Positions 4,375-58,818 of a stretch of 64,000 nucleotides of DNA are shown here, one piece after another. Position numbers and translations under genes: made by a program. The stretch is from Octopus sinensis. Lineage: Eukaryota. The notes below the pieces were generated by a model. The model worked only from the letters and a program-made list of their open reading frames with translations. It was not told the origin of the DNA and did no database searches. The stretch lies in contig NC_042997.1 of the NCBI RefSeq assembly GCF_006345805.1, positions 181,660,001 through 181,724,000 of the forward strand, in the 5' to 3' direction. The first letter of the stretch is position 1. Each line of letters starts with the position of its first letter.

Positions 4375-4460
4375 GGTCCCGGGTTGAGTCGGGGTTAACC
4401 ACAGTAAATAAGGTACTCAATACATAGCAGAGTAAATTAATTTAATTATTTTATAGAAGG

Positions 4461-4511
4461 AGCTTCTACAGGACTAGAACTGTTTCATTCAAAAGAAATC
4501 ATCAGGAAGCT
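4461..4511 (-). ncRNA. Type I hammerhead ribozyme motif (mirror copy in the palindrome)
   Basis: Identical to 4536-4586 on the opposite strand. Confidence 0.85.
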
Positions 4512-4535
4512 AGGTGACACCTATTCTTGTCACCT

Positions 4536-4586
4536 AGCTTCCTGATGATTTCTTTTGAATGAAACAGTTCTAGTCCTGTAGAAGCT
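4536..4586 (+). ncRNA. Type I hammerhead ribozyme motif
   Basis: AGCUUC CUGAUGA u-UUC-uuuu-GAA-u GAA ACAG-uucuaguc-CUGU A^ GAAGCU: 6-bp stem I, 4-bp stem III, intact core, GUA site. Confidence 0.85.
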
Positions 4587-4602
4587 CCTTCTATAAAATA
4601 AT

Positions 4603-4681
<79 letters not shown>

Positions 4682-4913: not shown

Positions 4914-6173
4914 TATTAGGTCATCAAGTATGAAATTTGTAGAAAAGAAAAAAAGTTTGCTAACGCTTTATAAATGCAAGGAATAGTTTTATTCATGAAA
5001 GTATGCACCCATATTGTCAATACACTTTTGCCATATCAGCGACAGCTTGACTAACCCGGAACTGTGAAATCCTGGTAATCTAGAGTCAATAAGATCTTGG
5101 AAGGCCTGTTTTACAGCATCGTCGGAATTAAATTTTTTCCATATCAGAAAGTTATACAAATTCCGGAAGAAGTGGCAGTCAGTGAGGGCAAGATCAGGTG
5201 AGTATGGTGGATGATAGAGAACTTCCAATTCCAACTCCTGTAGTTTCGTCAATGTCTTTTTTGCGATGTGTGGTCTGGCGTTGTCTTGCAATAAAATCAG
5301 AGTGGATCTGTTGACTAATCTAGGCTGGTTTTTTTTTGTAATTTTCTGCATTATTTGGTCCAATTGTCTGCAGTATACTTCGGCCGTGATTGATGAGCCA
5401 GGTTTAATGAAATCATAATGGATCACACCTGCGCCAGATCACCAAACACACCATCAGCTTCTTTTAATGAATTTTGCTTTTTGGACTGTGTTTTGGTGGC
5501 TAGTCTTTGTCCAACCATTGTGCTGAACGTTTACAGCTGTTGTATTGGATCCATTTCTAATCACATGTGACAATTCGATTCAAAAAGGATTAATTTTTGT
5601 GACGAGAAACTAGCATAATGTAGGCTTCCAAACGTTGCTGTTTCTGATTTTCCTTGAGTTCATGTGGAACCCACTTATCTAACGTTTTTTCACTTTACCG
5701 ATTTCAACTAGGTGAGTCAGTATTGTTTGCTTGCTAACACCAAACAACAACGATAATTCACGGGTACTTTGAGATGGATCTGACTTTCAGTTCGTCATTA
5801 TCCGCCTTTGTTTCTGGTCGACCGCGTTGTTCATTTGTGAAGTCAAAGTTATCAGAACGAAATTTTGCAAACCAATTTAATACTGTCTGCTGTATAATAA
5901 CATTAGAATGAAATACCCCCGTAATATTCCGAGCTGTTTGTGATGCTGTATTTCCAAGAAAGAACTCATATTTCAAAACTCTAAACAAAAGTAGCAAAGA
6001 GCGATTTATAAATACTTTATAAAGCACAAAATGAGTTAGAATAAAGAAATGGATGTGTCAGCTTTCTAACAAAATATAAAGATTATCAAAATATTATCAA
6101 AATGGCGCAAAATGAGCTGCTGTCAAAGTTTACCATATACCTTACTACAAATTTCCTACATAACGACCTAATA
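4914..6173 (-). mobile_element. Near full-length degenerate mariner transposon
   Basis: ORF pieces LLQDNARPH...HPPYSPDLA..DCHFF...D (DD34D-type) and N-terminal HTH with GRP; imperfect TIRs tattaggtc..gta.gaaattt at both ends; about 1.26 kb; frameshifts and stops. Confidence 0.9.
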
Positions 6174-6599
6174 TATATGGATATGCATATATGTATATAG
6201 TCGCTGGAACATAGAAAAGGAGCTAAATATCTCTATAGCTATTTATCCATAAATCCATCCATACATACACACACGTATACACGCGAGCAAACAAAGATAT
6301 AAATATGTATATGTATCAAGATGTTATCCCATACATACATTTATAAATGAATAAATACATGCACACATACAGACATATTTATATAGTATTATATATGTAT
6401 GATTTAATTTATAGATTTGTATATCAGATATAGATTTAATTTACTTGTTCGTTTTAGAACTAAACAACAAGTATGAGTGTTTATGCGTATGTCTGAGTGG
6501 GAACTTGTGTGTCGTATGGAATATATCAATTACTAATATGAATGTATATTCTGAATAGAATATATACGCCTGCACATAATTGTGTGTGTGTGTGTGTGT

Positions 6600-9117: not shown

Positions 9118-9144
9118 CAATATCAGGGTAGCAAAAAATTCAAG

Positions 9145-9236
9145 AGAAATTTTTCGCCACCAGCGGTTTGAGTTTAGCTGCTCTTTCTAGTGGGTCGAAT
9201 GGCCTATCAAAGCCATTCCTTAATATTGTTGAAATC

Positions 9237-9267
<31 letters not shown>

Positions 9268-9501
9268 ATTGATTTCAAAAGAAATTTTTCGCCACCAGCG
9301 GTTTGAGTTTAGTTGCTCTTTTAGTGGGTCGAATGGCTATCAAGGCCATTCCTTAATATTGTTGAAATCATATATATAATATATATATAATATAATATAT
9401 CTATGATTTCAAAATAAATTTTTCGCCACCAGCGGTTTGAGTTTAGTTGCTCTTTCTAGTGGGTCGAATGGCCTATCAGGCCATTCCTTAATATTGTTGA
9501 A

Positions 9502-9535
<34 letters not shown>

Positions 9536-17142: not shown

Positions 17143-17360
17143 GTTTGTGTGTTTGTGTGTCTCTGTCCCCCCAACATCGCTTGACAACCGACGCTGGTGT
17201 GTTTACGACCCCGTATCTTAGCGGTTCGGCAAAAGAGACCGATAGAATAAGTACCAGACTCACAAAGAATAAGTGCTGGGGTCGATTTGCTCGACTAAAG
17301 GCGGTGCTCCAGCATGACCGCAGTCAAACTACTGAAACAAGTGAAAGAGTAAAAGAGTAT
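16908..17360 (+). mobile_element. SINE group A
   Basis: Full copy with internal (TG)n. Confidence 0.85.
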
Positions 17361-18062: not shown

Positions 18063-18435
18063 TATTCTTTTAATTGTTTCAGTAATTTGACTGTGGCCAT
18101 GTTGAAACACCGCATTTAGTCGAACAAATGGACTCCAGGACTTATTCTTTGTAAGCCTAGTACTTATTCTAATAGTCACTTTTACCGAATTGCTAAATTT
18201 AGGGGACGTAAACATACCAACATCCGCTGTCAAGTTATGGTGGAGGTGACAAATACTGGCACACACACATAAATATATATATACGACGTGCTTCTTTCAG
18301 TTTCCGTCAACCAAATCCACTTACAAGGCTTTGGTCGGCGGCCCGAGGTCATAGTAGAAGAGACTTGCCCAAGGTAGCTTGCAGTGGGACTGAACCCGGA
18401 ACCATGTGGTTGGGAAGCAAGCTTCTTTCCACACA
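18063..18435 (-). mobile_element. SINE group A
   Basis: Full reverse copy, inverted relative to 17850-18000 and 16908-17360. Confidence 0.8.
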
Positions 18436-21820: not shown

Positions 21821-22004
21821 TAATATTCATCACAACAGTCACATCTCTCTCAAAAGTAACGAATATTAAGATGTTTTTATTCTGTTGGATTTCATTGTGC
21901 TTGCATGCTTCTGATTTTCAGAGCAAATACCTTTTGACTACTTCTAATGTACCGCCAAACCTTACAGATTCTTCCCCGAAGTGAAACATACCTTTTATCT
22001 TTTA

Positions 22005-22242
22005 TCTTTTACTTGCTTCAATAATTTGACTGCGTCTATGCTGGAGCACCACTCTGTATGGGTTTTAGTCGAGAACATTTTATTTTTAAGCCTGGTACTT
22101 ATTCTATCGGTCTCTTTGGCTGAACCACTTAGTTACGGGGACATAAACATACCAACACTGGTTACCAAACGGTGATGGAAGACAAATACCGATACAAAGG
22201 CACACACAAATAGACACACACACACACATACACACACACACA

Positions 22243-22308
<66 letters not shown>

Positions 22309-22462
22309 CGACGGACCTCTTTCAGTTTCCGTTTACCAAATTCACTTACAAGGCTTTGGTCGGCTCGAGGCTAATGCAGAAATCACTTGCCCAGGGTGCC
22401 ATGCAGTGGGACTGAACCCGGAACCATGTAGGTAGGAAGGAAGTTTCTTACCACACAGCAAT
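22005..22462 (-). mobile_element. SINE group A
   Basis: Full reverse copy with internal (CA)n. Confidence 0.8.
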
Positions 22463-22955: not shown

Positions 22956-23414
22956 GTTAGTTAGTTAGTTAGTTAATTTGGCTCAAAAGCAAATAGCAAG
23001 GCCATGTAGGGGGACATGGAGTTAAGTACAGGGTGGTGTTCATGTAAAGAGTTCAGGCCACTTGAGGTCCAGGGAGGCTTTGAACAAAGCGGTCGTCGGC
23101 ATCTTTACCATCTCGTCTGGCAGCTTGTTCCACGGATCCGCAACCCGGACGGAGAAAGCTCCTCTCCTTCGATTGAGATGAAATCGTCGCAGGTAGAGCT
23201 TTTCGGAATGACCCCGCAGCCGACGCTCTGGAGCAGGAGTGAAGAACAGCTCTTTCGAGAGGTTACACTTTCCGCTTATGATGTTGTGGGCGAGAATGAG
23301 ATCACTACGGCGGCGGCGTTTTTCAAGATAATAAAGGTCGAGCGTCCTCAGCCTTTTCCACAAACAATACCTTACACTCTTTAAAACGTATTGGATAGCG
23401 TAGTCCATGGACAT
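22956..23414 (-). mobile_element. CR1-clade LINE 3' end
   Basis: RLRTLDLYYLEKRRRRSDLILAHNII...LRGHSEKL...FSVRVADPWNKLP..V....FKASLD is the canonical CR1 ORF2 C-terminus; (TAAC)n tail at ~22956-22975. Confidence 0.9.
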
Positions 23415-30500: not shown

Positions 30501-30764
30501 AGTGTGCGTGTGTGTGCGTGTGTGTGTGGTGTGTGTGGTGTGTGTGTGTGTGTGTGTGCATGCTCATGTGTATGGGTATGTCTGTCAGTGTGTTTTTGTG
30601 CGCGTTAGTGTGCGTGCGTGTCGTTTTGGTTGAAAATGCTTGTTGGGAAAAAAATGCTTGGGATGGGGAAAAACGTTTGGCGGCATTTCGTCCGTCTTTA
30701 TGTTCTGAGTTCAAATTCCGCCGAGGTTTAACTTTGTCTTTCATCCCTTTTCGGAATCTCTTTT

Positions 30765-31135
30765 ACTCTTTTACTTGTTTCAGTCATTTGACTGCGGCCA
30801 TGCTGGAGCACCGCTTTTAGTCGAGCAAATCAACCCCATGACATATTCTTTGTAAGCCTAGTACTTATTCTATCGGTCTCTTTTGCCGAACCGCTAAGTT
30901 ACAGGGACGTAAACACGCCAGCCTCGGTTGTCAAGCGATGTGGGGGGACAAACACAGACACACAAACACACACACACGCACACACACACACATATATACA
31001 AATACATATATACGACGGGCTTCTTTCAGTTTCCGTCTACCAAATCCACTCACAAGGCTTTGGTCAGCCCGAGGCTATAGAAGATGACACTTGCTCAAGG
31101 TGTCACGCAGTGGGACTGAACTCGGAACCATGTGG
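30765..31135 (-). mobile_element. SINE group A (abutting a group C head fragment at ~30650-30755)
   Basis: Near-consensus reverse copy. Confidence 0.85.
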
Positions 31136-31924: not shown

Positions 31925-31928
<4 letters not shown>

Positions 31929-32108
31929 AGAATTCACAAGAAAACAAAAGAGGAAGACAGGTGGTGTAGACAAACAGATGTATTAGTTTAACGCTCAGGA
32001 AGTGAAAAAGCTTTTAACGTTTCGAGCCTACGCTCTTTCACTGAGAGGAACACAGAAAGAAACAGGGAGAGAAAATAAAGAATGCGTAGTGGCTAGCGAT
32101 CTATCATG
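31925..32108 (-). mobile_element. Short HHR-bearing element family Q (degenerate core)
   Basis: Homologous to 37549-37730 and 46245-46405; stem II GAGC-guag-GCUC GAAACGUU is retained but the core is mutated. Confidence 0.75.
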
Positions 32109-32754
32109 GCGATATATACATATATATATATAACAAATTTATTTTGTGGAAGTTTTGAAGAGGTTTAGGCAGAAATTTCGTCGCAAAATGCACCAATCCA
32201 TACTTCCAGTCCTCCGAGGGACATATATGAAGTCGAACTGTTGAATATGTTAATGTAAACTGCATACGTTTTTCTCTGGCTCTCTTCGTAAAACTAAACT
32301 CTTTATGGACGGGAAACCTAAGGTAATCCCATAAACTTGCCGTCTCCATTTGTCATATATATATATATTACGGAGATGCACTATAGCAAGTGACCTGATC
32401 TGAGATCGTGTACTGGAACGAAAACAATTGCAGCGTGGAAGGTGTTTATAAACCATTTAAGAAACACACGGAATTTTGCTGCACGGAACTTTGTCAGTGA
32501 ACAGGTCGCGGTCTCAAAGCGACGAAAATATTTTTACAAATGAAATTTAAATGTTGAAGTGAATCTAACGGTTTTTGTGTGTTTCTTAAATGGCTTATAA
32601 TCTCCTTCCACGCTGCAATTGTATATATATATATATATATATACATATATATGTGTGTGTGTATATGTACATGTAGAGGTAGGTACGTACATATATGTTT
32701 ATATATATGCATATATTTTATTTCATTTATTAATATATATATATATTATATATA

Positions 32755-37284: not shown

Positions 37285-37490
37285 TGCACTTTTATCTTTC
37301 ATCTTTTGCCTGTTTCAGTCATTAGACTGCGGCTTTGCTGGGGCATCGCATTGAAGAATTTTTAATCAAATTATTTTTTAAACCTGATACTTATTCTTTA
37401 AGACCCTTTTGCCGTACCGCCAAGTTACAGGGACGTAAACACTCCAACAATATCGGTTGTCAAACGATGGTGAGCTACAAATACAGAAAA
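37285..37490 (-). mobile_element. SINE group A, 3' half
   Basis: Tail only. Confidence 0.65.
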
Positions 37491-37548: not shown

Positions 37549-37730
37549 AGGGAGAATTCACAAAAGAACAAAAGACGAAGATAGGTGTTGTAGACAACAA
37601 ACTGATGTTTTATTATAACGCTCGGGAAGTGAAAAAGTCTTTAACGTTTCGAGCCTACGCTCTTCCACAGAAAGGAACACAGAAAGAAACAAGGAGAGAA
37701 AATAAGAATGTGCAGTGGCTAGCGATCTAT
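37549..37730 (-). mobile_element. Short HHR-bearing element family Q
   Basis: ~180 bp between TA repeats; contains the HHR motif at 37639-37674. Confidence 0.8.
37639..37674 (-). ncRNA. Minimal hammerhead motif with variant core CUGUGGA
   Basis: CUUU CUGUGGA a GAGC-guag-GCUC GAA ACGU U^ AAAG; palindromic stem III; A6 replaced by U. Confidence 0.6.
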
Positions 37731-37743
37731 TATATATATATAA

Positions 37744-38121
37744 AGGAACGATTTTTTGCCAACCTAATGTGGCAGTCCCATTTTGGTGTGAATGCTACTG
37801 TTGTTTAGCTCCAGGAGACATCACCTCCAGCTAGCTATACGACACACGATCTGTGTCCTTATATTTTCGAACAGGATAGGTTAGTACCCCAACCCAGTAC
37901 AGAATTATTTTGTGCCGACGAAGAGAAATAACCCGGAAACCGTATGGTTCACAGATACTGCTTTGTGCTAGGTGGGAATGCTAACCTCCCTTATTCGAAA
38001 ATATAAGGAACCAGATCGTGTGTTGTATAGCCAGCTGGAGATGAAGTCACCTGGAGCTAAACAATAGTAGCATTCGCCCCAAAATGAGACTGCCACATTA
38101 GGTTGACAAAAAATCATTCCT
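37744..38121. mobile_element. Foldback MITE with ~130-bp TIRs, Kolobok-like ends
   Basis: 37744-~37870 pairs with ~37995-38121; ends (ATAA)|AGG...CCT|TTAA. Confidence 0.8.
37909..37955 (+). ncRNA. Hammerhead motif (U4C core) in the MITE spacer
   Basis: UUUGUG CCGACGA a GAG-aaauaa-CCC g GAA ACC-guau-GGU U^ CACAGA; 6-bp stem I, 3-bp stem III, one mismatch in stem II. Confidence 0.6.
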
Positions 38122-40021
38122 TTAAAGTGCTGCTATTGAATATCTCTCGTTGAGAGATTTAGGAACAACTATGTCTATATATATGTGTATGTTTGTATAC
38201 GACGGTCTTCTTTCAGTTTCCGTCTACCAAATATACTCAGAAGAATTTGGTCGCTCGAGGCAATAGCAATAGAAACTTTCCTAAGTTTCCATGCAGTGGG
38301 ACTGGGCTTGGAGTCATGTGAGACATGATTCATATAATCTTATGATATAAAATTTAGCAGGTAAGCTAATCAAAGGAAGTTATACTTTAGAGATAGGAAT
38401 TTTATATATCTGATATCATGCCTGCGACTTTACAGCAACATCATTATCGTTAAAATGCTGTGATCCATGATTTTCTGTCATAGATAACTTGCTGATATGA
38501 AAGAATAACAAGTGATCTAAGATCACAAAATGGTAAGATTGACATCAAGAGATCTTGAATTTGAGGGTCAAAAGAGTTTCCAAATTCACATATCTTTAAT
38601 ATTTCTGTCTAATATTTTATAAACGACGTTGTACTTTGTATTAATATTGATATGGTGATTTGGGTTTTTCGAGACATATTCCCAAGACATATTCTAAAAG
38701 ACTTCATGCTACAACGTTAAAAGAGAATTATCAGGTAAGAATTAGAGTAAGGCTTTAATATTATTCAGTGCACTGGAAAATGGGGTGACTTCAAAACCAA
38801 ACTTTAGGAATCCTACATCAGAAGAATTTTGTCAAGCAAGTGTGCATGGATGTTATATTTTAATATCCGAAGGAAATTATTTGACTTGGATTGATTCCGT
38901 TATTTATTACTCCCTCTGGCTTATTGATATTTCAATGCGAAAATGGCATAATTTATAGCTGATATATTTCTATCTAACCTGAAAGTAAATATATTAGCTT
39001 TCATGTTGTCTATCATATATTGTAGGTCGTTATATATGCGAGGAAAAAAATGGAATAGGGGACTGTATTTGAGAAGCCTCATAAATTAATCTTGTTCGGA
39101 TTGAAGATAAAGAAAGCCAAGAAATATGTTATCGTCTTCTGCATCTTGCCCACACCACTAATACTATATAACATTTAAAAATATAATATATAATTAAATC
39201 GATTGCCGGAATCAAATTATATGATTAACATTTTATCTATTGATTAGATGTGGGTAAAAGTAGCAGTCAGAAATATCGGAAGCCACTCCTCTTAGTGTTG
39301 AGTATAGGATTAATTTACAGCGCAAAATGTAATATATTTCGTCTGAAATTTGGATATACCGACAATATTGAACGTTAATGAATTTCACAGTTTTTTCCTT
39401 GGAAGTATTTTCGGTATAATAGTGTGTGTGTGTGTGTGTGTGTAAGTGGATGTAGGAAATTTCGTGGAAGAATGTCTGATTGTGCATTTTCTTAGGAACG
39501 TGGCATGTAATTTGTAAGATCCTATTGCAAACCTTCTGCGTATTGAATATATTTTATTTCGCAGTTCCCTGAAAGTGAGACCGGCAGTTTTGAGATTGCT
39601 TCATTCAATTAAAAAGTTGTGATAACAACAATAACGTTACAGAAAGGAGAGCAGTATTGTTTCTGCTTGACAGAGCTATCCTCATTTCTCAAATGTTATA
39701 TTAATGTTACCCGAGCCTCAAATCCGACACATCGTATCCATAAATAGCCACTTTGGCGAAGATATTACATTGAGAACATCGTAACCATATCACTTTCAAC
39801 ACCACTAATACTCAATCACTATCCATAAGGACTATATTGTACCTTTCCTGCTTGAGACATGAATACCACACAATTTAGATACGCCAAATCTACATAAATA
39901 CTAAAGCTTGCAATCCCTGAAGATATCTCTATAAGCTATGGAATATTTTAGTCTTGTCCAGTTAATGCTAAAATAAATGCCACTATAGAACACCTCTCAT
40001 AAATCTGGGACAGTACTGCAC

Positions 40022-41358: not shown

Positions 41359-41412
<54 letters not shown>

Positions 41413-41449
41413 ACTACTACTACTGCTACTGCTGCTGCTGCTGCTGCTG

Positions 41450-41484
<35 letters not shown>

Positions 41485-41491
41485 GCTACTA

Positions 41492-41535
<44 letters not shown>

Positions 41536-41545
41536 AGTGTTGCTG
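41358..41545. repeat. (CTA)n/(CTG)n compound microsatellite
   Basis: Direct reading. Confidence 0.95.
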
Positions 41546-41788
41546 CTTACTTATTTACTTAGATACCTGTTTATTTCATAGCTAATCTTTTGAACAGATA
41601 AGTTGAAACATTTAGAAATAGCTACGTGCGAATTTGCTTCGCTGATTTCTGTCTTTTTTTTTTCATTCTTCTGTAAAAGGGAAATATTTAAGTCTTTGAT
41701 GACGCTTTATTGTCATGCGGTTAATATATTTCAGTTGGAAAACATTTTAGATAAAAATCAAATGTTTCCTTCCTTTGACAACTTTTGT

Positions 41789-41790
41789 TG

Positions 41791-41822
<32 letters not shown>

Positions 41823-42052
41823 GTGGTAGTGATGGTAATGATGATGATGATGACGATGATGATGGTGACGATGACGATGACGATGACGATGATGATGATG
41901 ATGATGATGATGATGACGATGATGACGATGACGATGATGATGGTGACGATGACGATGACGATGACGATGATGATGATGATGATGACGATGACGATGATGA
42001 TGATGATGGTGGTAGTGATGGTAGTAGTGGTGGTGGTGGTAGTAGTAGTGAC

Positions 42053-42090
<38 letters not shown>

Positions 42091-42702
42091 CGATGACGAT
42101 GACGATGATGATGGTGACGATGACGATGACGATGATGATGATGATGATGACGATGACGATGACGATGATGATGATGATGATGACGATGACGATGACGATG
42201 ATGATGATGATGGTGGTAGTGATGGTAATGATGATGATGATGACGATGATGATGGTGACGATGACGATGACGATGACGATGATGATGATGATGATGATGA
42301 TGATGACGATGACGACGATGACGATGATGATGGTGACGATGACGATGACGATGACGATGATGATGATGATGATGACGATGACGATGATGATGATGATGGT
42401 GGTAGTGATGGTAGTAGTGGTGGTGGTGGTAGTAGTAGTGATGATGATGATGATGAGATGATGATGATGATGATGACGATGACGATGATGATGGTGACGA
42501 TGACGATGACGATGATGATGATGATGATGACGATGACGATGACGATGATGATGATGACGATGACGATGACGATGATGATGATGATGATGACGATGACGAT
42601 GACGATGACGATGATGATGATGATGATGATGACGATGATGATGATGATTATGATGATGATGATGATGATGATGACGATGATGATGATGATAACGACAATG
42701 AC
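41789..42702. repeat. (GAT/GAC)n compound trinucleotide array with 390-bp higher-order duplication
   Basis: Landmarks ggtggtagtgatggtaat (~41822, ~42212) and ggtggtagtgatggtagtagtggt (~42008, ~42398) recur 390 bp apart. Confidence 0.9.
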
Positions 42703-42944: not shown

Positions 42945-43527
42945 ATCTTTGCTACTCTAGGCACAAGGCCCGAAATTTTGGGGGAGGGAGATAGTCGATT
43001 ACATCGACTCCAGGATGCAACTGGTACTTAATTTATCGACCCCGAAAGGATGAAAGGCAAAGTCGGCCTCGGCGGAATTTGAACTCAGAACGTAGCAGCA
43101 GACGAAATACCAATTTCTTTACAACCCGCAAGGGGCTAAACAGAGAGGGGACAAACAAGGACAGACAAACGGATTAAGTCGATTATATCGACACCAGTGC
43201 GTAACTGATACTTATTTAATCGACCCCGAAAGGATGAAAGGCAAAGTCGGCCTCGGCGGAATTTGAACTCAGAACGTAGCAGCAGACGAAATACCAATTT
43301 CTTTACAACCCACAAGGGGCTAAACAGAGAAGGGACAAACAAGGACAGACAAACGGATTAAGTCGATTATATCGACACCAGTGCATAACTGGTACTTATT
43401 TAATCGACCCCGAAAGGATGAAAGGCAAAGTCGACCTTGGCAGAATTTGAACTCAGAATGTAACGGCAGACGAAATACGGCTACGTATTTCGCCCGGCGT
43501 GCTAACGTCTCTGCCATCTCGCCGCCT
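42945..43527 (-). mobile_element. SINE group C trimer
   Basis: One head plus three bodies joined at aaagaaatt|ggtatttcgtctgctg; the last unit has an alternative tail. Confidence 0.85.
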
Positions 43528-46212: not shown

Positions 46213-46244
46213 CATTTTATATATATATATATGTACAGCCATGA

Positions 46245-46405
46245 TAGATCGGTAGCCACTACACACATTTTTTCTCTCCTTGTTTCTTTCTGTGTTCCTT
46301 TCTGTGGAAGAGCGTAGGCTTGAAACGTAAAATACTTTTTCACATCTGTTTGCTCTCTACACCACCTGTCTTCGTCTTTTGTTTTTTTTCGTGAATTCTC
46401 CCTAT
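46245..46405 (+). mobile_element. Short HHR-bearing element family Q
   Basis: HHR motif at 46298-46333: CUUU CUGUGGA a GAGC-guag-GCUU GAA ACGU A^ AAA. Confidence 0.75.
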
Positions 46406-50369: not shown

Positions 50370-51597
50370 TATATTATATATATATATGTATGTGTGTATG
50401 TGTGTGTGTGAGTATGTGTATGTTTGGACTTATATATATATATGTGTGTGTGTTGTTGTGTGTTCATTGTATGTACTTTAGCACACCGATGGTAACTTCT
50501 TCAATCTATGGTAGCCAAATGCCAAAGCAAAGGAGGCTTGTGTGTTGGTATGGGATCTTCTCTATGCTCATGATTGTTGCTTTACCTCTCGCATTCTTGA
50601 AGCTTCCCAGGATATCGTTGGTGACTTTGTCGGTGCCACTGTTCAGTATAGCCTGAACATCACTTTAAAGAACACGGTAATACTGAACTACCAATTTATC
50701 ACCGACACACTCTCCACTTATCCTATCCTCAACTTCAGCACTGAACCACGTAGGTCCATGGGCAAATTGTGTTTCCACAGTGGTGCAATTTAGCGGAATA
50801 CCAAGATCGATCGCGAGAAGGAACGTATCACCAAATCACAGTGTGATTTGGACGTCAAGTGCCGTAGGGTGATGGGAAAATGTTTGCTCATGGCAGAATA
50901 ACTCGGACGACAGTAATCGAGAGAAATGTCATTACTATGTAACGGAAAAGAGCGATGGATCGGCGGAATTGTTAAAGCATCAAGGGAAAATATATATTAG
51001 TGATAGATATTGATTGACAGATAGTTTGATAGAAGAATGATGTAAGAATAGGCGGTATATGATGATAAAAAATGTAAAACAGCCAATTTGGTTAAAGATA
51101 TCAAACGTGTAAATAAATTATCCAGAGATCTTATCTGAATCAAAAGTAATGAATTGTTCGATTCTACGTTTAGGTATAGAATGTATGGGGATCGAAGCCA
51201 ATATATTATTAGATATATCAGTAGATATCTTCTAAGAGAGTTTTCGAATGCTTTCCGTTTAATTAACGTAGAGTCTCTGTATCATTCAGCCAGGCGGAGA
51301 CTATTGTTACATTAGATGGTATATGTTTGTGCTGACTGAACTATGCAATGTAGCTCAATTGGGACCCGTTTAACAGTCTCACCTAGCACATTGGGCACCG
51401 TTTGGAGGAGTCCATAATGTTATAAGTATTCACGTCTTGCCTCTGCTTTCAGGACGTAGTGTTTCTTCTTCTTCTACTAGACTCAGAGGTTCTGTAAAGG
51501 TTCATGAGCGTCACATTCCCTTTCGATTAAAAGGCTATATACATACGCATATACACAAGCACACGCACACATATATATCTTTCTTTCTTTTTTTTTT

Positions 51598-51970
51598 TAT
51601 CTTTTTACTTGTTTCAGTCATTTGACTGTGGCCATGCTGGAGCACCGCCTTTAGTCGAGCAAATCGACCCTAGGACTTATTCTTTGTAAGCCTAGTACTT
51701 ATTCAATCGGCCTCTTTTGCCGAACCGCTAAGTTATGGGAATGTAAACACACCAGCATCGGTTGTCAAGCGATGTTGGGGGGAGGGGACAAACACACACA
51801 CACACATATATATATACATATATACAACGGGCTTCTTTCAGTTTCCGTCTACCAAATTCACTCACAAGGCTTTGGTCGGCCCGAGGCTATAGTAGAAGAC
51901 ACTTGCCCAAGTTGTCACGCAGTGGGACTGAACCCGGGACCATGTGGTTGGTAAGCAAGCTACTTACCAC
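51598..51970 (-). mobile_element. SINE group A
   Basis: Near-consensus reverse copy. Confidence 0.85.
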
Positions 51971-52419: not shown

Positions 52420-52832
52420 TCTTTACTCTTTTACTTGTTTCAGTCATTTGACTGCGGCCATGCTGGAGCACCGCCTTTAGTCGAGCAAATCAACCCCGGG
52501 ACTTATTCTTTGTAAGCCCAGTACTTATTCTATCGGTCTCTTTTGCCGAACCGCTAAGTGACGGGGACGTAAACACACCAGCATCGGTTGTCAAGCAATG
52601 CTAGGGGGACAAACACAGACACAGAAACACATACACACACACACATATATACATATATATACATATATACGACATGCTTCTTTCAGTTTCCGTCTACCAA
52701 ATCCACTCACAAGGCATTGGTCGGCCCGGGGCTATAGCAGAAGACACTTGCCCAAGATGCCACGCAGTGGGACTGAACCCGGAACCATGTGGTTGGTTAG
52801 CAAGCTACTTACCACACAGCCACTCCTGCGCC
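52420..52832 (-). mobile_element. SINE group A
   Basis: Near-identical reverse complement of 43660-44075. Confidence 0.9.
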
Positions 52833-53490: not shown

Positions 53491-53769
53491 ACAATTGGGA
53501 AATATTGACAAACGAATGATTTTCGTTTATGACATTTGAATAAGCAGCGCTGATAGAAAACGACTTTGCAGTGTTTACTGAATGTTCTTGACGTTCTCAA
53601 TTCAAACCCCTTCTGTTTTCGCCTTTTCCGTCGTTAATAAATTATGGTTGCATGTGGACACAATCTCACTATATCTTAATATGCGTGGTCTTGTGCCTAT
53701 ATTAGAAACCAATACACGTGTGATTGTGGTCCGGGTTAGAATCCAGCCATAATAATAATAATAATGATA

Positions 53770-53923
53770 AATTGCACTACTAGGCACTGCACACATCCTA
53801 CGCAGAACAATTTCCATACAATAACCATCAGAGCATCACAACAAATCACAGCACATACCCAAGGCACACAGAGCTGCGCTCGGTAGTGAAGTGAAAGCAC
53901 GCTATAAAAATAAAACTACTGAA
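53770..53923 (+). mobile_element. R4/Dong-like retrotransposon 3' end in (TAA)n
   Basis: Same sequence as the 3' part of 2243-2875; (TAA)n at 53749-53769 and 53924-53940. Confidence 0.85.
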
Positions 53924-54101
53924 TAATGATAATAATAATAGCAAAAAAAGAAGAGAGCCATTGTTATCAAGTTATCGATATTTCGACATCTCCTGTGTTT
54001 TCCACAGGTTCAAAAAATAGACTTGTCAATCTACTTCATTTTGGTTAATATTTATAGGATTGAGGTAATACCTCCAGAAGATGCATACACACACACACAC
54101 A

Positions 54102-54424: not shown

Positions 54425-54452
54425 TATTATTATTATTATTATTATTATTATT

Positions 54453-54655
54453 GTTCAGTAGTTTTATTTTTATAGCGTGCTTTCACTTCACTACCGAGCG
54501 CAGCTCTGTGTGCCTTGGGTATGTGCTGTGATTTGTTGTGATGCTCTGATGGTTATTGTATGGAAAGTGTTCTGCGTAGGATGTGTGCAGTGCCTAGTAG
54601 TGCAATTTTCTGTATGTTATATGTGTTTGTAAGTCCTGGTGTTTTTGTTATGTAT
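54453..54655 (-). mobile_element. R4/Dong-like retrotransposon 3' end in (TAA)n
   Basis: Near-identical to 2267-2445; (TTA)n at 54423-54452. Confidence 0.85.
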
Positions 54656-56334: not shown

Positions 56335-56748
56335 TGGGATTCAGAACACTTTCTGTTTTCCTAGTTCCATTCACAAAAGTAGCTGAAACTATTGTATGAG
56401 ACATTTGCCCAAGGTACTGGGCAATGGTTTCGAACGCTGAACTATATTAAAATGTAACTAAGCCATTAGCTACAGAGTAATTCTAGCACCCATCTATATA
56501 GATGGGTTATAAAATTTCAGTGAGCAAACACACATGCACATAAGCTATTTTTCAATGATATTTCTTTTTCTGAAGCAATATTTGAAACATCCTTAGCTGC
56601 CGCATGCAACATGGTTGAAAAGATTAAGTGCTGAGATGTATACTCGGAATCATGAATGATTGATATACGAATTTCATGAATTCGTGGTTTGTTCTGTCTT
56701 TAGTCAAAATATTTGACACCATTTTCGTCATGTTAGTCAACAGGAAAA

Positions 56749-57392
56749 TATGAGGGGAAGTGAAAAGTTATCTGCACTTTCGCTATAACATATCTTTATT
56801 ATTGTTACACTGCCTTCTACGCATGCGTGCTTATAGTTGGTATTATTGTGGTCACGTAATTGAAATTTAAGCCTGATCACCCCATTTTTCTTTCTGTCTT
56901 TGCAGTGTAAGCATAGCCTCTCCACTAGTAATGCTCACCAAAGAAGAACAAAGATTAGTGATCCGATTTCTCTGATTGAAAGGTGTGTCTGGTGCTGAAA
57001 TTCATCAGAGGCTTTTAGAACAATACGGAAATAGTGTACTGCCACTTAGAAGTGTGTATGAGTGGATCGAGAGCTTTAAAAGTGGCCCGACAAGCATGAC
57101 GCACGAGGAGAGAGCAGGACGCTCGTCAACCTCCACCAATGACGAGAAGATTCAGGAGATGATACTGGTGAACCGGTTCACCATTACCATCTCTCGGATC
57201 ATTGCTGTTTGTTAATCTTTAGTGCACATTGCTAGTGTAAAGCCAGAAAGAAAAAATGACGCAATCAGGCTTAAATTTCGGTCACGTGACCACAATAGTA
57301 CCAACTATAAGCGTGCATGAGCAGAAGGCAGTGTGATAATAATAAAAATATGATGTGGCGAAAGTGTGGATAATTTTGAACTTCCCCTCATA
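56749..57392 (+). mobile_element. Mariner-derived foldback element with ~170-bp inverted repeats
   Basis: 56749-~56915 pairs with ~57225-57392; the centre encodes a mariner HTH (GAEIHQRLLEQYG..V...RSVYEWIESFKSG.TS..HEERAGR). Confidence 0.85.
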
Positions 57393-57499
57393 TTTACTAT
57401 TAGCAAAATTTAATCCACAGTACACTCATGTATTATCTCGGAGTTTGGGCATTTGTTCTCTCTCATCTTGTTATTACATTAAACTTTATATTAAAAAAA

Positions 57500-58250: not shown

Positions 58251-58405
58251 TGAAATATTGGGATAGTACTTACTGCTGCATAATATGTTTCTAGGGAAGT
58301 GACTAAGATGTACTGTGAAGGTTTGATAGCGAGATATGTATTTATAACGTGGAAGCACCCTGAATTATTAGTCAGTTGTCATACATACATGCATACATAC
58401 ATACA

Positions 58406-58818
58406 TAGAAGAAAAATACGTACTGTCATAGAAGTCAGCTGTCCTGGTGATGTGAATATTTCTTTGAAAATCAAAGAGAAAGATGATTGTGGACAATTAC
58501 TTCGAAACCTCCATCTTCTTTATTCGGGTTACAAATTTACGTTTATACCAATAATAAATGGAACACTTGGTTTTGTAAGTAAATGCCTAACTGTCAGTCT
58601 GGATAAGCTTTTGTTTTCAGAAAAAGAAATCAACCAACTGATTCGCACATTGCAAATACAATCTGTAAGCAGAACAATAAAACTATGCAAGACTTTTCTC
58701 AGTTTTAAAATGTGACATTATTTTTGTTATTTACATTCCAAAGATGGAGCTTTGTATCATTGTTAGAAACCAGCTTCTTCAGAGCAAAAATTTAAATGAT
58801 TAAATACAGAAGAGACAA
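58406..58818 (+). mobile_element. 5'-truncated RLE-type non-LTR retrotransposon (second family) in (TACA)n
   Basis: VIEVSCPGDVNISLKIKEK.D.CGQLLRNL..LY.GYKFTFIPII.GTLG is RLE-like; (TACA)n at ~58380-58405 and 58819-58898. Confidence 0.75.

What the first reader, a model, noticed from the sequence alone, without database searches (positions are those of the whole stretch)
37744..38121. Hammerhead motif inside a TTAA-flanked DNA-transposon-type foldback element
~130-bp TIRs with AGG...CCT|TTAA ends (Kolobok-like; left target ATAA) enclose a ~120-bp spacer containing a fully foldable HHR. HHRs are normally linked to retroelements. One in a cut-and-paste MITE could be a captured pLTR or a hybrid mobile unit. 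Cleavage in the loop would open a long hairpin RNA into dsRNA with defined ends.
Basis: partly seen in the sequence, partly recalled or inferred. Interest (0 to 1): 0.75.

Follow-up and report, generated by a model that had tools for sequence, protein, structure and literature searches.

The report
Foldback transposon relic, no real hammerhead
This is an ordinary, decayed hairpin-shaped miniature DNA transposon sitting in a TA repeat; the "hammerhead ribozyme" in its centre is a chance near-match that fails the tests I could run here.

Summary
The foldback is real. It has two 161-nt arms (37741-37901 and 37964-38124, 86% complementary; 90% over the outer 130 nt) around a 62-nt centre, and its RNA fold z-score is -30. 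A second, 76-80% identical copy found in public read assemblies stops matching exactly at the same terminus, so this is a discrete repeated element. Its ends (AGGAAC / AGGAAT) fit the AGGRR terminal motif of Kolobok-type T2-MITEs. The TTAA target is intact at only 1 of 3 observable termini (ATAA at the other two), and a plain TA duplication fits all three.

The hammerhead is not confirmed:
- The motif (37909-37955, + strand) reads CCGACGA instead of CUGANGA.
- Helix II forms only 2 of 4 pairs (pair probability about 0.01).
- The hammerhead fold is less stable than the competing fold (-2.8 vs -6.9 kcal/mol).
- No Rfam hammerhead model matches, even at E<=10 on 111 nt.
- Motifs this loose occur 0.30 times per shuffled window (P>=1 = 0.27).
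- The other copy has the same deviant core, keeps GAG (not GGG) in helix II, and changes helix III without compensation.

Verdict: an ordinary MITE-like foldback of low interest. The ribozyme reading is not supported.

The parts
37741..37901 (+). Left arm of the foldback (long terminal inverted repeat). The element proper starts at A37744 (AGGAAC..., TTAA reading) or A37743 (AAGGAAC..., TA reading).
   Evidence: the repeat finder pair I1, 161 nt, 86% complementary. The outer 130 nt are 90% identical to the other arm. Similarity to the Logan copy starts here.
37964..38124 (-). Right arm of the foldback, the reverse complement of the left arm. The element ends at T38121 (...ATTCCT) or T38122.
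   Evidence: It is 76% identical to L001:895-1118.
37902..37963 (.). Non-palindromic centre of the foldback. Compared with the Logan copy it lacks a 35-nt central hairpin, and it keeps a 28-nt asymmetric piece (37922-37949).
   Evidence: Identity to L001 over the centre is 81%, no higher than expected for the family.
37909..37955 (+). Hammerhead-LIKE motif (not a ribozyme): helix I 37909-14/37950-55; CCGACGA 37915-21; unpaired 'helix II' 37922-35; GAAA 37936-39; helix III 37939-48; U17 37949.
   Evidence: Descriptor scans. Energies and pair probabilities. No Rfam hit. Chance expectation 0.30 per window. No covariation.
37740..37743 (.). Left flank ATAA, at the end of a (TA)n tract (37723-37742). 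It is either a mutated TTAA duplication or T + TA duplication + first A of the element.
   Evidence: Sequence. Comparison of three termini.
38122..38125 (.). Right flank TTAA. It is either an intact TTAA duplication, or last T of the element + TA duplication + A.
   Evidence: Sequence.

Best explanation
The feature is an old, decayed copy of a non-autonomous cut-and-paste DNA element of the foldback / MITE type. It is about 380 bp long and is almost entirely two long inverted arms.

It inserted into a (TA)n tract. That tract lies inside the microsatellite core of an abundant SINE-like repeat, in a repeat-rich non-coding stretch of what looks like a cephalopod genome.

Mobilisation (inferred, not shown) would have been in trans, by a DDE transposase that recognises the AGGAA... 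termini. The best available assignment is the Kolobok / T2-MITE type (TTAA target). A TA-duplicating transposase is not excluded.

The element encodes nothing. If transcribed through, it would form a roughly 160-bp imperfect hairpin RNA, a possible Dicer substrate. No ribozyme is involved.

The hammerhead resemblance is a coincidence. The foldback supplies 'helix I' for free, and the loop happens to contain a 6-of-7 match to the CUGANGA box, a GAAA and a 3-bp hairpin.
For: Shown:
- Foldback geometry and extreme fold stability.
- A second family member at an unrelated locus, recovered from four sequencing runs, 76-80% identical. Similarity begins exactly at the terminus and the flanks are unrelated.
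- Termini AGGAAC / AGGAAT match the published AGGRR / RR..YY Kolobok signature. Kolobok is reported in molluscs.
- The insertion lies within (TA)n, after a 190-bp repeat unit that is followed by plain (TA)n at its two other copies in the window.
- The arms differ by 16 transitions and 7 transversions, as expected for neutral decay.

Against a ribozyme:
- C at core position 4, in both copies.
- Helix II unpaired.
- No Rfam hammerhead hit in either copy at E<=10.
- Chance expectation 0.30 per window.
- No compensatory change, and one double non-compensatory change.
- The motif is no better conserved than the arms, 79% vs 76%.
- In the Logan copy the 'core' CCGAC and the 'helix I' 3' strand are paired to other parts of the rod.
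Against: - Only two family members could be compared, so there is no true consensus. The Logan contigs also break inside the right arm.
- The CCGACGA and GAAA boxes are identical in both copies (11 of 11 positions; about 6% expected at 77% identity). This is mildly more than average, although they sit in a longer conserved block.
- No autonomous partner was found, and no empty site was available, so mobility and the target duplication are inferred.
- Two of three termini have ATAA, not TTAA, which weakens the Kolobok assignment.
- The organism was recognised only from my memory of its repeats.
Confidence: 0.82

Rival explanations
1. The centre holds a degenerate relic of a true hammerhead. It would have been captured from a Penelope-like element or an animal retrozyme before the family spread, so the ancestral element was a ribozyme-carrying hybrid.
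For: - The order of the boxes is that of type-I animal hammerheads: helix I 6 bp, a short helix III with a tetraloop, and H17 = U.
- Both boxes are retained in the second copy.
- Loop 2 (AAAUAA) resembles, from memory, the CAAAUA loop of the Schistosoma ribozyme.
- Weak helix II bases (a U.U mismatch) exist in active axolotl hammerheads (PMC7229834).
Against: - The deviant C4 and the unpaired GAG strand are shared by both copies, so they are ancestral as far as can be seen.
- No covariance-model signal in either copy.
- Helix III changes without compensation.
- There is no tandem arrangement and no pLTR-like flank. Animal hammerheads occur in tandem repeats or in PLE terminal repeats.
- Conservation is not elevated.
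- The motif quality is at chance level.
Confidence: 0.05
2. The element is a TA-duplicating (Tc1/mariner/pogo-type, Stowaway-like) foldback MITE with ends AAGGAA...TTCCTT, not a TTAA / Kolobok element.
For: - TA directly flanks AAGG / AAGT at all three observable termini, whereas TTAA is intact at only one.
- The insertion is in a (TA)n tract.
- A mariner-like element with a DDE_3 / Transposase_1 remnant is present in the window.
- The subterminal TTAGGTTGG (37760-37768 on the minus strand, 38098-38106) recalls, from memory, mariner TIR starts.
Against: - The window's mariner has unrelated TIRs, TTAGGTCATCAAG....
- The ends fit the published Kolobok / T2-MITE AGGRR motif exactly.
- ATAA as a mutated TTAA is documented for a Kolobok copy in the same table.
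- The TTAGGTTGG stretch points outward and is not preceded by TA.
Confidence: 0.3
3. It is not a mobile element but a locally formed palindrome, or a dedicated long-hairpin RNA (endo-siRNA / miRNA-like) gene.
For: - There is only one copy in the 64-kb window.
- It is a very stable hairpin.
- No TE protein lies nearby.
Against: - A related copy with the same terminus sits in unrelated flanking DNA.
- The ends carry a transposon-type terminal motif and a TA/TTAA flank.
- Arm decay of 14%, with a transition excess, argues against selection on pairing.
Confidence: 0.07

Closest known systems
T2-MITEs (e.g. [quoted passage not shown]
   Same: - The terminal AGGRR motif (AGGAA at both ends here) and the RR..YY termini.
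- TTAA next to one end.
- Short, non-coding, with inverted-repeat architecture.
- The superfamily is reported in molluscs (PMC6004289; PMC9587614).
   Different: - TTAA is intact at only 1 of 3 termini.
- The arms are unusually long (about 130-160 bp of a 380-bp unit), so it is nearly a pure palindrome.
- No Kolobok transposase partner was identified.
- There is no sequence similarity to the published Xenopus TIRs beyond the first 5 bases.
Tc1/mariner-derived MITEs (Stowaway-like, MADE1-like)
   Same: TA flanks at every terminus, insertion in a TA-rich tract, small size, hairpin-forming.
   Different: The termini do not resemble the mariner element in the window or the usual CAGT / TTAGG starts (from memory).
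Type-I hammerhead ribozymes of animal retrozymes, Penelope-like elements and Schistosoma Sm-alpha
   Same: The order helix I - CUGANGA-like box - GAAA - short helix III - H17, and an AU-rich loop 2.
   Different: - C at invariant position 4, no helix II, and no G10.1-C11.1.
- No tandem or pLTR context.
- No Rfam match and no covariation.
MITE-derived long hairpin RNA loci (hpRNA / MITE-derived miRNA precursors)
   Same: A read-through transcript would form a long imperfect duplex. The second foldback in the window hits MITE-derived miRNA families generically.
   Different: No expression or small-RNA data were available. Nothing shows that this locus is processed.

Membership tests
Hammerhead ribozyme (Rfam clan CL00010) | Invariant core boxes C3-U4-G5-A6-N7-G8-A9 and G12-A13-A14 | tested here: not met
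   The box reads CCGACGA (U4 replaced by C) in the window and in the Logan copy. GAAA is present.
Hammerhead ribozyme (Rfam clan CL00010) | Helix II closing the core (normally starting with G10.1-C11.1) | tested here: not met
   In AGAG / CCCG, A.G and A.C are mismatched and only 2 isolated pairs form, with pair probability 0.01. In the Logan copy the middle pair is A.A.
Hammerhead ribozyme (Rfam clan CL00010) | Helices I and III with A15.1-U16.1 and a non-G nucleotide at the cleavage site | tested here: met
   Helix I is 6 bp, helix III is ACC / GGU, and U is at position 17. However, helix I is supplied by the foldback, and in the Logan copy those bases pair elsewhere.
Hammerhead ribozyme (Rfam clan CL00010) | Significant score against a hammerhead covariance model | tested here: not met
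   No hit at gathering score. None at E<=10 on 701 nt, on 111 nt, or on the Logan copy.
Hammerhead ribozyme (Rfam clan CL00010) | Helices maintained by compensatory changes among relatives | tested here: inconclusive
   Only 2 independent copies are available. There are 0 compensatory pairs, and one helix III pair changes C-G to G.A.
Hammerhead ribozyme (Rfam clan CL00010) | Self-cleavage 3' of position 17 | not testable with these tools
   This needs in vitro transcription of 37880-37990 (+).
Kolobok superfamily / T2-MITE | Terminal RR..YY, specifically AGGRR in T2-MITEs | tested here: met
   AGGAAC (37744-) and AGGAAT (reverse complement of -38121). The Logan copy has AGTAAC. The definition comes from PMC6004289 and PMC9587614.
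Kolobok superfamily / T2-MITE | TTAA target-site duplication on both sides | tested here: inconclusive
   Right flank TTAA, left flank ATAA, Logan copy ATAA. No empty site was available.
Kolobok superfamily / T2-MITE | An autonomous element with a Kolobok DDE transposase sharing the termini | not tested
   No eukaryotic genome collection could be searched by DNA. None was seen among the window's ORFs of at least 120 aa.
MITE / non-autonomous DNA transposon in general | Dispersed copies with the same termini in unrelated flanks | tested here: met
   One further locus was found (L001-L004). Similarity starts at the terminus and the flanks are unrelated. The copy number in the source genome is unknown.
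Tc1/mariner-type MITE | TA target duplication | tested here: met
   TA abuts AAGG / AAGT at all 3 termini. This is not discriminating, because TA is part of TTAA / ATAA.
Tc1/mariner-type MITE | TIR similarity to a Tc1/mariner transposon | tested here: not met
   There is no similarity to the TIRs of the window's mariner-like element at about 4915-6175.
Animal retrozyme / Penelope-like pLTR | Hammerhead-bearing unit in tandem repeats or PLE terminal repeats | tested here: not met
   It is a single inverted unit, with no tandem copy. The context definition comes from PMC7229834.

The most novel reading that the evidence does not exclude
The family's ancestor carried a working, non-canonical (C4) minimal hammerhead in the loop of a cut-and-paste foldback element. 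Read-through hairpin transcripts would then be nicked at a defined point. A possibly related observation is the second, unrelated foldback in the same window (4433-4614), which carries a perfect-core hammerhead-like motif in each arm. Together these could hint that foldback elements of this genome recurrently host such motifs.
Probability: 0.03. Interest if true: 0.7.

Novelty: new member of a known kind. Interest (0 to 1): 0.1.

Why it matters
If the hammerhead were real, it would be the first self-cleaving ribozyme tied to a cut-and-paste DNA transposon rather than to a retroelement. It would also suggest a ribozyme-defined route from hairpin transcripts to double-stranded RNA. The evidence indicates it is not real.

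What remains is one more unclassified foldback MITE family, useful only for repeat annotation of this (probably cephalopod) genome. The practical lesson concerns motif reading in foldbacks. Palindromic elements supply 'helix I' for free, so loose hammerhead matches in their loops are expected by chance. Here there were 28 helix-I-less matches in 64 kb.

Tried and rejected
1. Other copies inside the window: none (blastn).
2. Exact-pattern scans of the metagenome and viral collections with an 18-mer shared by both arms: 0 hits.
3. A second metagenome scan with a 17-mer shared with the Logan copy: more than 120 hits, all chance. None had extended similarity.
4. Treating arm ORFs as proteins to reach read assemblies:
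   - The word-indexed search found nothing with the 49-aa ORF.
   - It found nothing with a concatenated six-frame query either, and that query did not even recover P0001, so this negative result is uninformative.
   - The index-free phmmer search of representatives did find one copy, P0001. A search with P0001 returned only itself.
5. Exact look-ups of window ORFs, to find the source contig or species: not on record.
6. Identifying the species of the SRR118693xx runs through the literature: the only hit was an unrelated accession.
7. A paralogous empty site from the two other copies of the 190-bp left-flank repeat: their downstream flanks differ, so no empty site could be reconstructed.
8. 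The mariner element in the window as autonomous partner: rejected, because its TIRs are unrelated.
9. Hammerhead on the minus strand or in other registers: no box within 1 mismatch plus GAAA.

Full report
**The observation**

The repeat finder reports arms 37741-37901 and 37964-38124, 161 nt long, 86% complementary, with 62 nt between them. The outer 130 nt are 90% identical between the arms and the inner 31 nt only 68%.

Either strand folds as RNA into an almost continuous rod: -236.1 and -248.7 kcal/mol, z = -30 and -25, with none of 100 shuffles folding as well. The ends read AGGAAC... and ...ATTCCT, with ATAA to the left and TTAA to the right. No second copy exists in the window.

**The hammerhead motif**

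Strict scans for CUGANGA, a helix II hairpin and GAAA found nothing on either strand, even with one core mismatch allowed.

- helix I UUUGUG (37909-14) / CACAGA (37950-55)
- CCGACGA (37915-21)
- AGAG-AAAUAA-CCCG (37922-35)
- GAAA (37936-39)
- helix III ACC-GUAU-GGU (37939-48)
- U37949 as the cleavage-site nucleotide

The motif therefore has C in place of the invariant U4 and essentially no helix II:

- The helix II pair probabilities are 0.01.
- The hammerhead fold scores -2.8 kcal/mol, or -0.9 with helix II forced.
- The MFE is -6.9 kcal/mol, and in it the 'core' CCGACG is paired.

The hammerhead is defined by 15 highly conserved core nucleotides framed by three helices (PMC6155905). From established mutational work, core substitutions strongly reduce cleavage. 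I did not test that here.

**Covariance models**

Rfam 15 gives no match in the whole window at gathering thresholds. It gives none at E<=10 in 37600-38300. It also gives none at E<=10 when only the 111-nt centre is searched, which is the most permissive filter setting. That setting does report weak hits: on the other foldback in the window it listed 32 matches, including a 15-bit Hammerhead_3 hit.

**Chance expectation**

I wrote a descriptor just loose enough to accept the candidate:

- at most 1 core mismatch
- exact GAAA
- at least 2 of the first 4 helix II positions paired
- helix III of at least 3 bp with A-U at its base
- H17 not G
- helix I of at least 5 bp

In 400 block-wise dinucleotide shuffles of the window it finds 0.30 hits per 64 kb on both strands, with P(>=1) = 0.27.

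Shuffling removes inverted repeats, so this understates the real rate. Without the helix I requirement the real window holds 28 such motifs, about one per 4.6 kb of strand. A foldback provides helix I automatically. The motif is therefore not more than chance would give.

**Related sequences**

The DNA collections on hand hold no eukaryotic genomes. Exact 18-mer and 17-mer scans gave nothing, or only chance hits.

The route that worked was to translate the open frame of the right arm (54 aa) and run an index-free phmmer search against 1.84 billion representative proteins. One hit, P0001 (E = 2.6e-7), is an ORF called across another copy of the element in Logan read assemblies. Its DNA was recovered from four runs of one project, as the same locus (L001-L004).

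This copy is 76-80% identical to the window element. Similarity begins exactly at the TAAAG terminus, and the flanks are unrelated. That shows a discrete repeated element rather than a local duplication. The contigs break inside the far arm, as expected for assemblies of a palindrome.

In + sense, the two copies read:

- window: GUG|CCGACGA|AGAGAAAUAACCCG|GAAA|CCGUAUGGU|U|CACAGA
- Logan copy: GUG|CCGACGA|AGAGAAAAUAAUACU|GAAA|GCAUGUGAU|C|CACAGA

The comparison gives five results:

- The deviant C4 is shared, so it is not a private mutation of a once-canonical core.
- The helix II 5' strand is GAG in both copies, and the 3' strand is UAC rather than CCC.
- A helix III pair goes from C-G to G.A by changes on both sides.
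- Counting the named structure on the alignment gives 0 compensatory pairs.
- The motif is 79% identical between the copies and the arm 76%, so conservation is not elevated.

The Logan copy gets no hammerhead hit either.

It also carries an extra 35-nt central hairpin. In its MFE fold the CCGAC of the 'core' and the CACAGAUACUGC of 'helix I' are paired to distant parts of the rod, and the remainder is an asymmetric internal loop.

With only two copies this is not a consensus. Still, every comparison points the same way.

**What the element is**

[quoted passage not shown] These features are shared with Kolobok, which makes TTAA duplications, has RR..YY termini, and is reported in molluscs (PMC6004289; PMC9587614).

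The target duplication is unsettled:

- The three observable termini are flanked by ATAA, TTAA and ATAA.
- A TA duplication with AAGG... ends fits all three without invoking mutation.
- The insertion lies in a (TA)n tract.
- A mutated ATAA is documented for one Kolobok copy in the cited table.

I give the TTAA / Kolobok reading about 2:1 over the TA reading. No autonomous partner is in the window, and the mariner-like element at about 4915-6175 has unrelated TIRs.

**Context**

The foldback lies in the (TA)n that follows a 190-bp repeat unit (37551-37740). That unit has two other copies in the window, each followed by plain (TA)n.

The whole insert splits an abundant SINE-like repeat. Its two halves (about 37290-37490 and 38170-38320) are adjacent in at least 10 other copies in the window.

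The window is microsatellite-rich. From memory, it carries repeats I recognise as octopus-type. I could not verify that.

**Mechanism**

- Shown: the structure, the termini, and the existence of a second copy.
- Inferred: trans-mobilisation by a DDE transposase, old age (arms 14% diverged, 16 transitions to 7 transversions), and hairpin RNA formation if the element is transcribed.
- No evidence: ribozyme activity, or the proposed 'opening' of the hairpin.

**Verdict**

The foldback MITE is real and ordinary. The Kolobok-like label is plausible but unproven. The hammerhead is a chance near-match. Interest is low.

Noticed in passing
window 4433-4614: A second, unrelated foldback: 87-nt arms, 97% complementary, 8-nt loop, embedded between (TA)n arrays, with TTAA next to both ends.

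Each arm carries a type-I hammerhead-like motif with a perfect core and a GUA cleavage triplet: AGCUUC-CUGAUGA-UUUC UUUU GAAU-GAAA-CAG UUCUAGUC CUG-U-A|GAAGCU (+ strand 4536-4586, mirrored on the minus strand at 4511-4461).

Helix II starts with a U.U mismatch, as in the active axolotl HHR_Amex2 (PMC7229834). Perfect-core hits are expected 0.02 times per shuffled window.

Against it: Rfam gives only Hammerhead_3 at 15 bits, E = 1.5, in another register. The motif is not the MFE fold, and in a read-through transcript the two arms would pair with each other. No other copy could be searched for.
   Followed up: partly
window 4915-6175 (minus strand): A decayed mariner-like DNA transposon. The ORF at 4989-5426 matches DDE_3 and Transposase_1. 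The TIRs are TTAGGTCATCAAGTATGAAATTTGTAG / its complement, and they are TA-flanked.
   Followed up: partly
window 37290-37490 + 38170-38320; also 30759-31134, 51587-51930, 52420-52791, 21992-22414 and others: An abundant SINE-like composite repeat with an internal (CA)n(TA)n microsatellite, present in at least 10 copies in the window. The copy around the finding is split by about 680 bp, made up of the 190-bp unit, the foldback and a short tail. From memory, the repeat resembles the common octopus repeat. This is not verified.
   Followed up: partly
window 37551-37740, 31927-32118, 46241-46401: A 190-bp repeat unit (GGGAGAATTCAC...GTGGCTAGCGATCTAT), always preceded and followed by TA / CA microsatellite. 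Its nature is unknown.
   Followed up: partly
window 37760-37768 (minus strand) and 38098-38106: A subterminal TTAGGTTGG/A in each arm, about 20 nt from the end and pointing outward. From memory, it resembles the 5' start of mariner / MADE1 inverted repeats. It is not preceded by TA and is probably a coincidence.
   Followed up: no
window 53769-53947 / 54430-54608; 56746-56889 / 57252-57395; 17168-17351 / 18063-18246: Other long inverted-repeat pairs (179 nt at 97%, 144 nt at 84%, 184 nt at 79%), with spacers of 360-710 nt. They are possibly inverted SINE pairs or further MITEs.
   Followed up: no
window 41791-42690: A roughly 900-bp (TGA/GAT)n array that reads as a 367-aa poly-Asp ORF. Adjacent to it is a (TAC)n array at 41359-41547.
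   Followed up: no
window 42993-43478 and 9139-9533: Tandem arrays of a 184-bp unit (2.6 copies; it contains a tRNA-derived SINE-like sequence...GGCGGAATTTGAACTCAGAACG...) and of a 135-bp unit (2.9 copies).
   Followed up: no
window 23040-23414 (minus strand) and 58299-58715 (+): ORFs of 124 and 138 aa that, from memory, look like C-terminal tails of non-LTR retrotransposon proteins. They have no Pfam hit.
   Followed up: partly
L001:1104-1169 (Logan SRR11869385): The related copy carries an extra near-perfect central hairpin (TTCGGCTGAGAT-GGTGC-GATCTCAGCCGAA) that is absent from the window copy. Among generic miRNA-precursor models, the best hit on it is MIR391 at 22.5 bits.
   Followed up: partly
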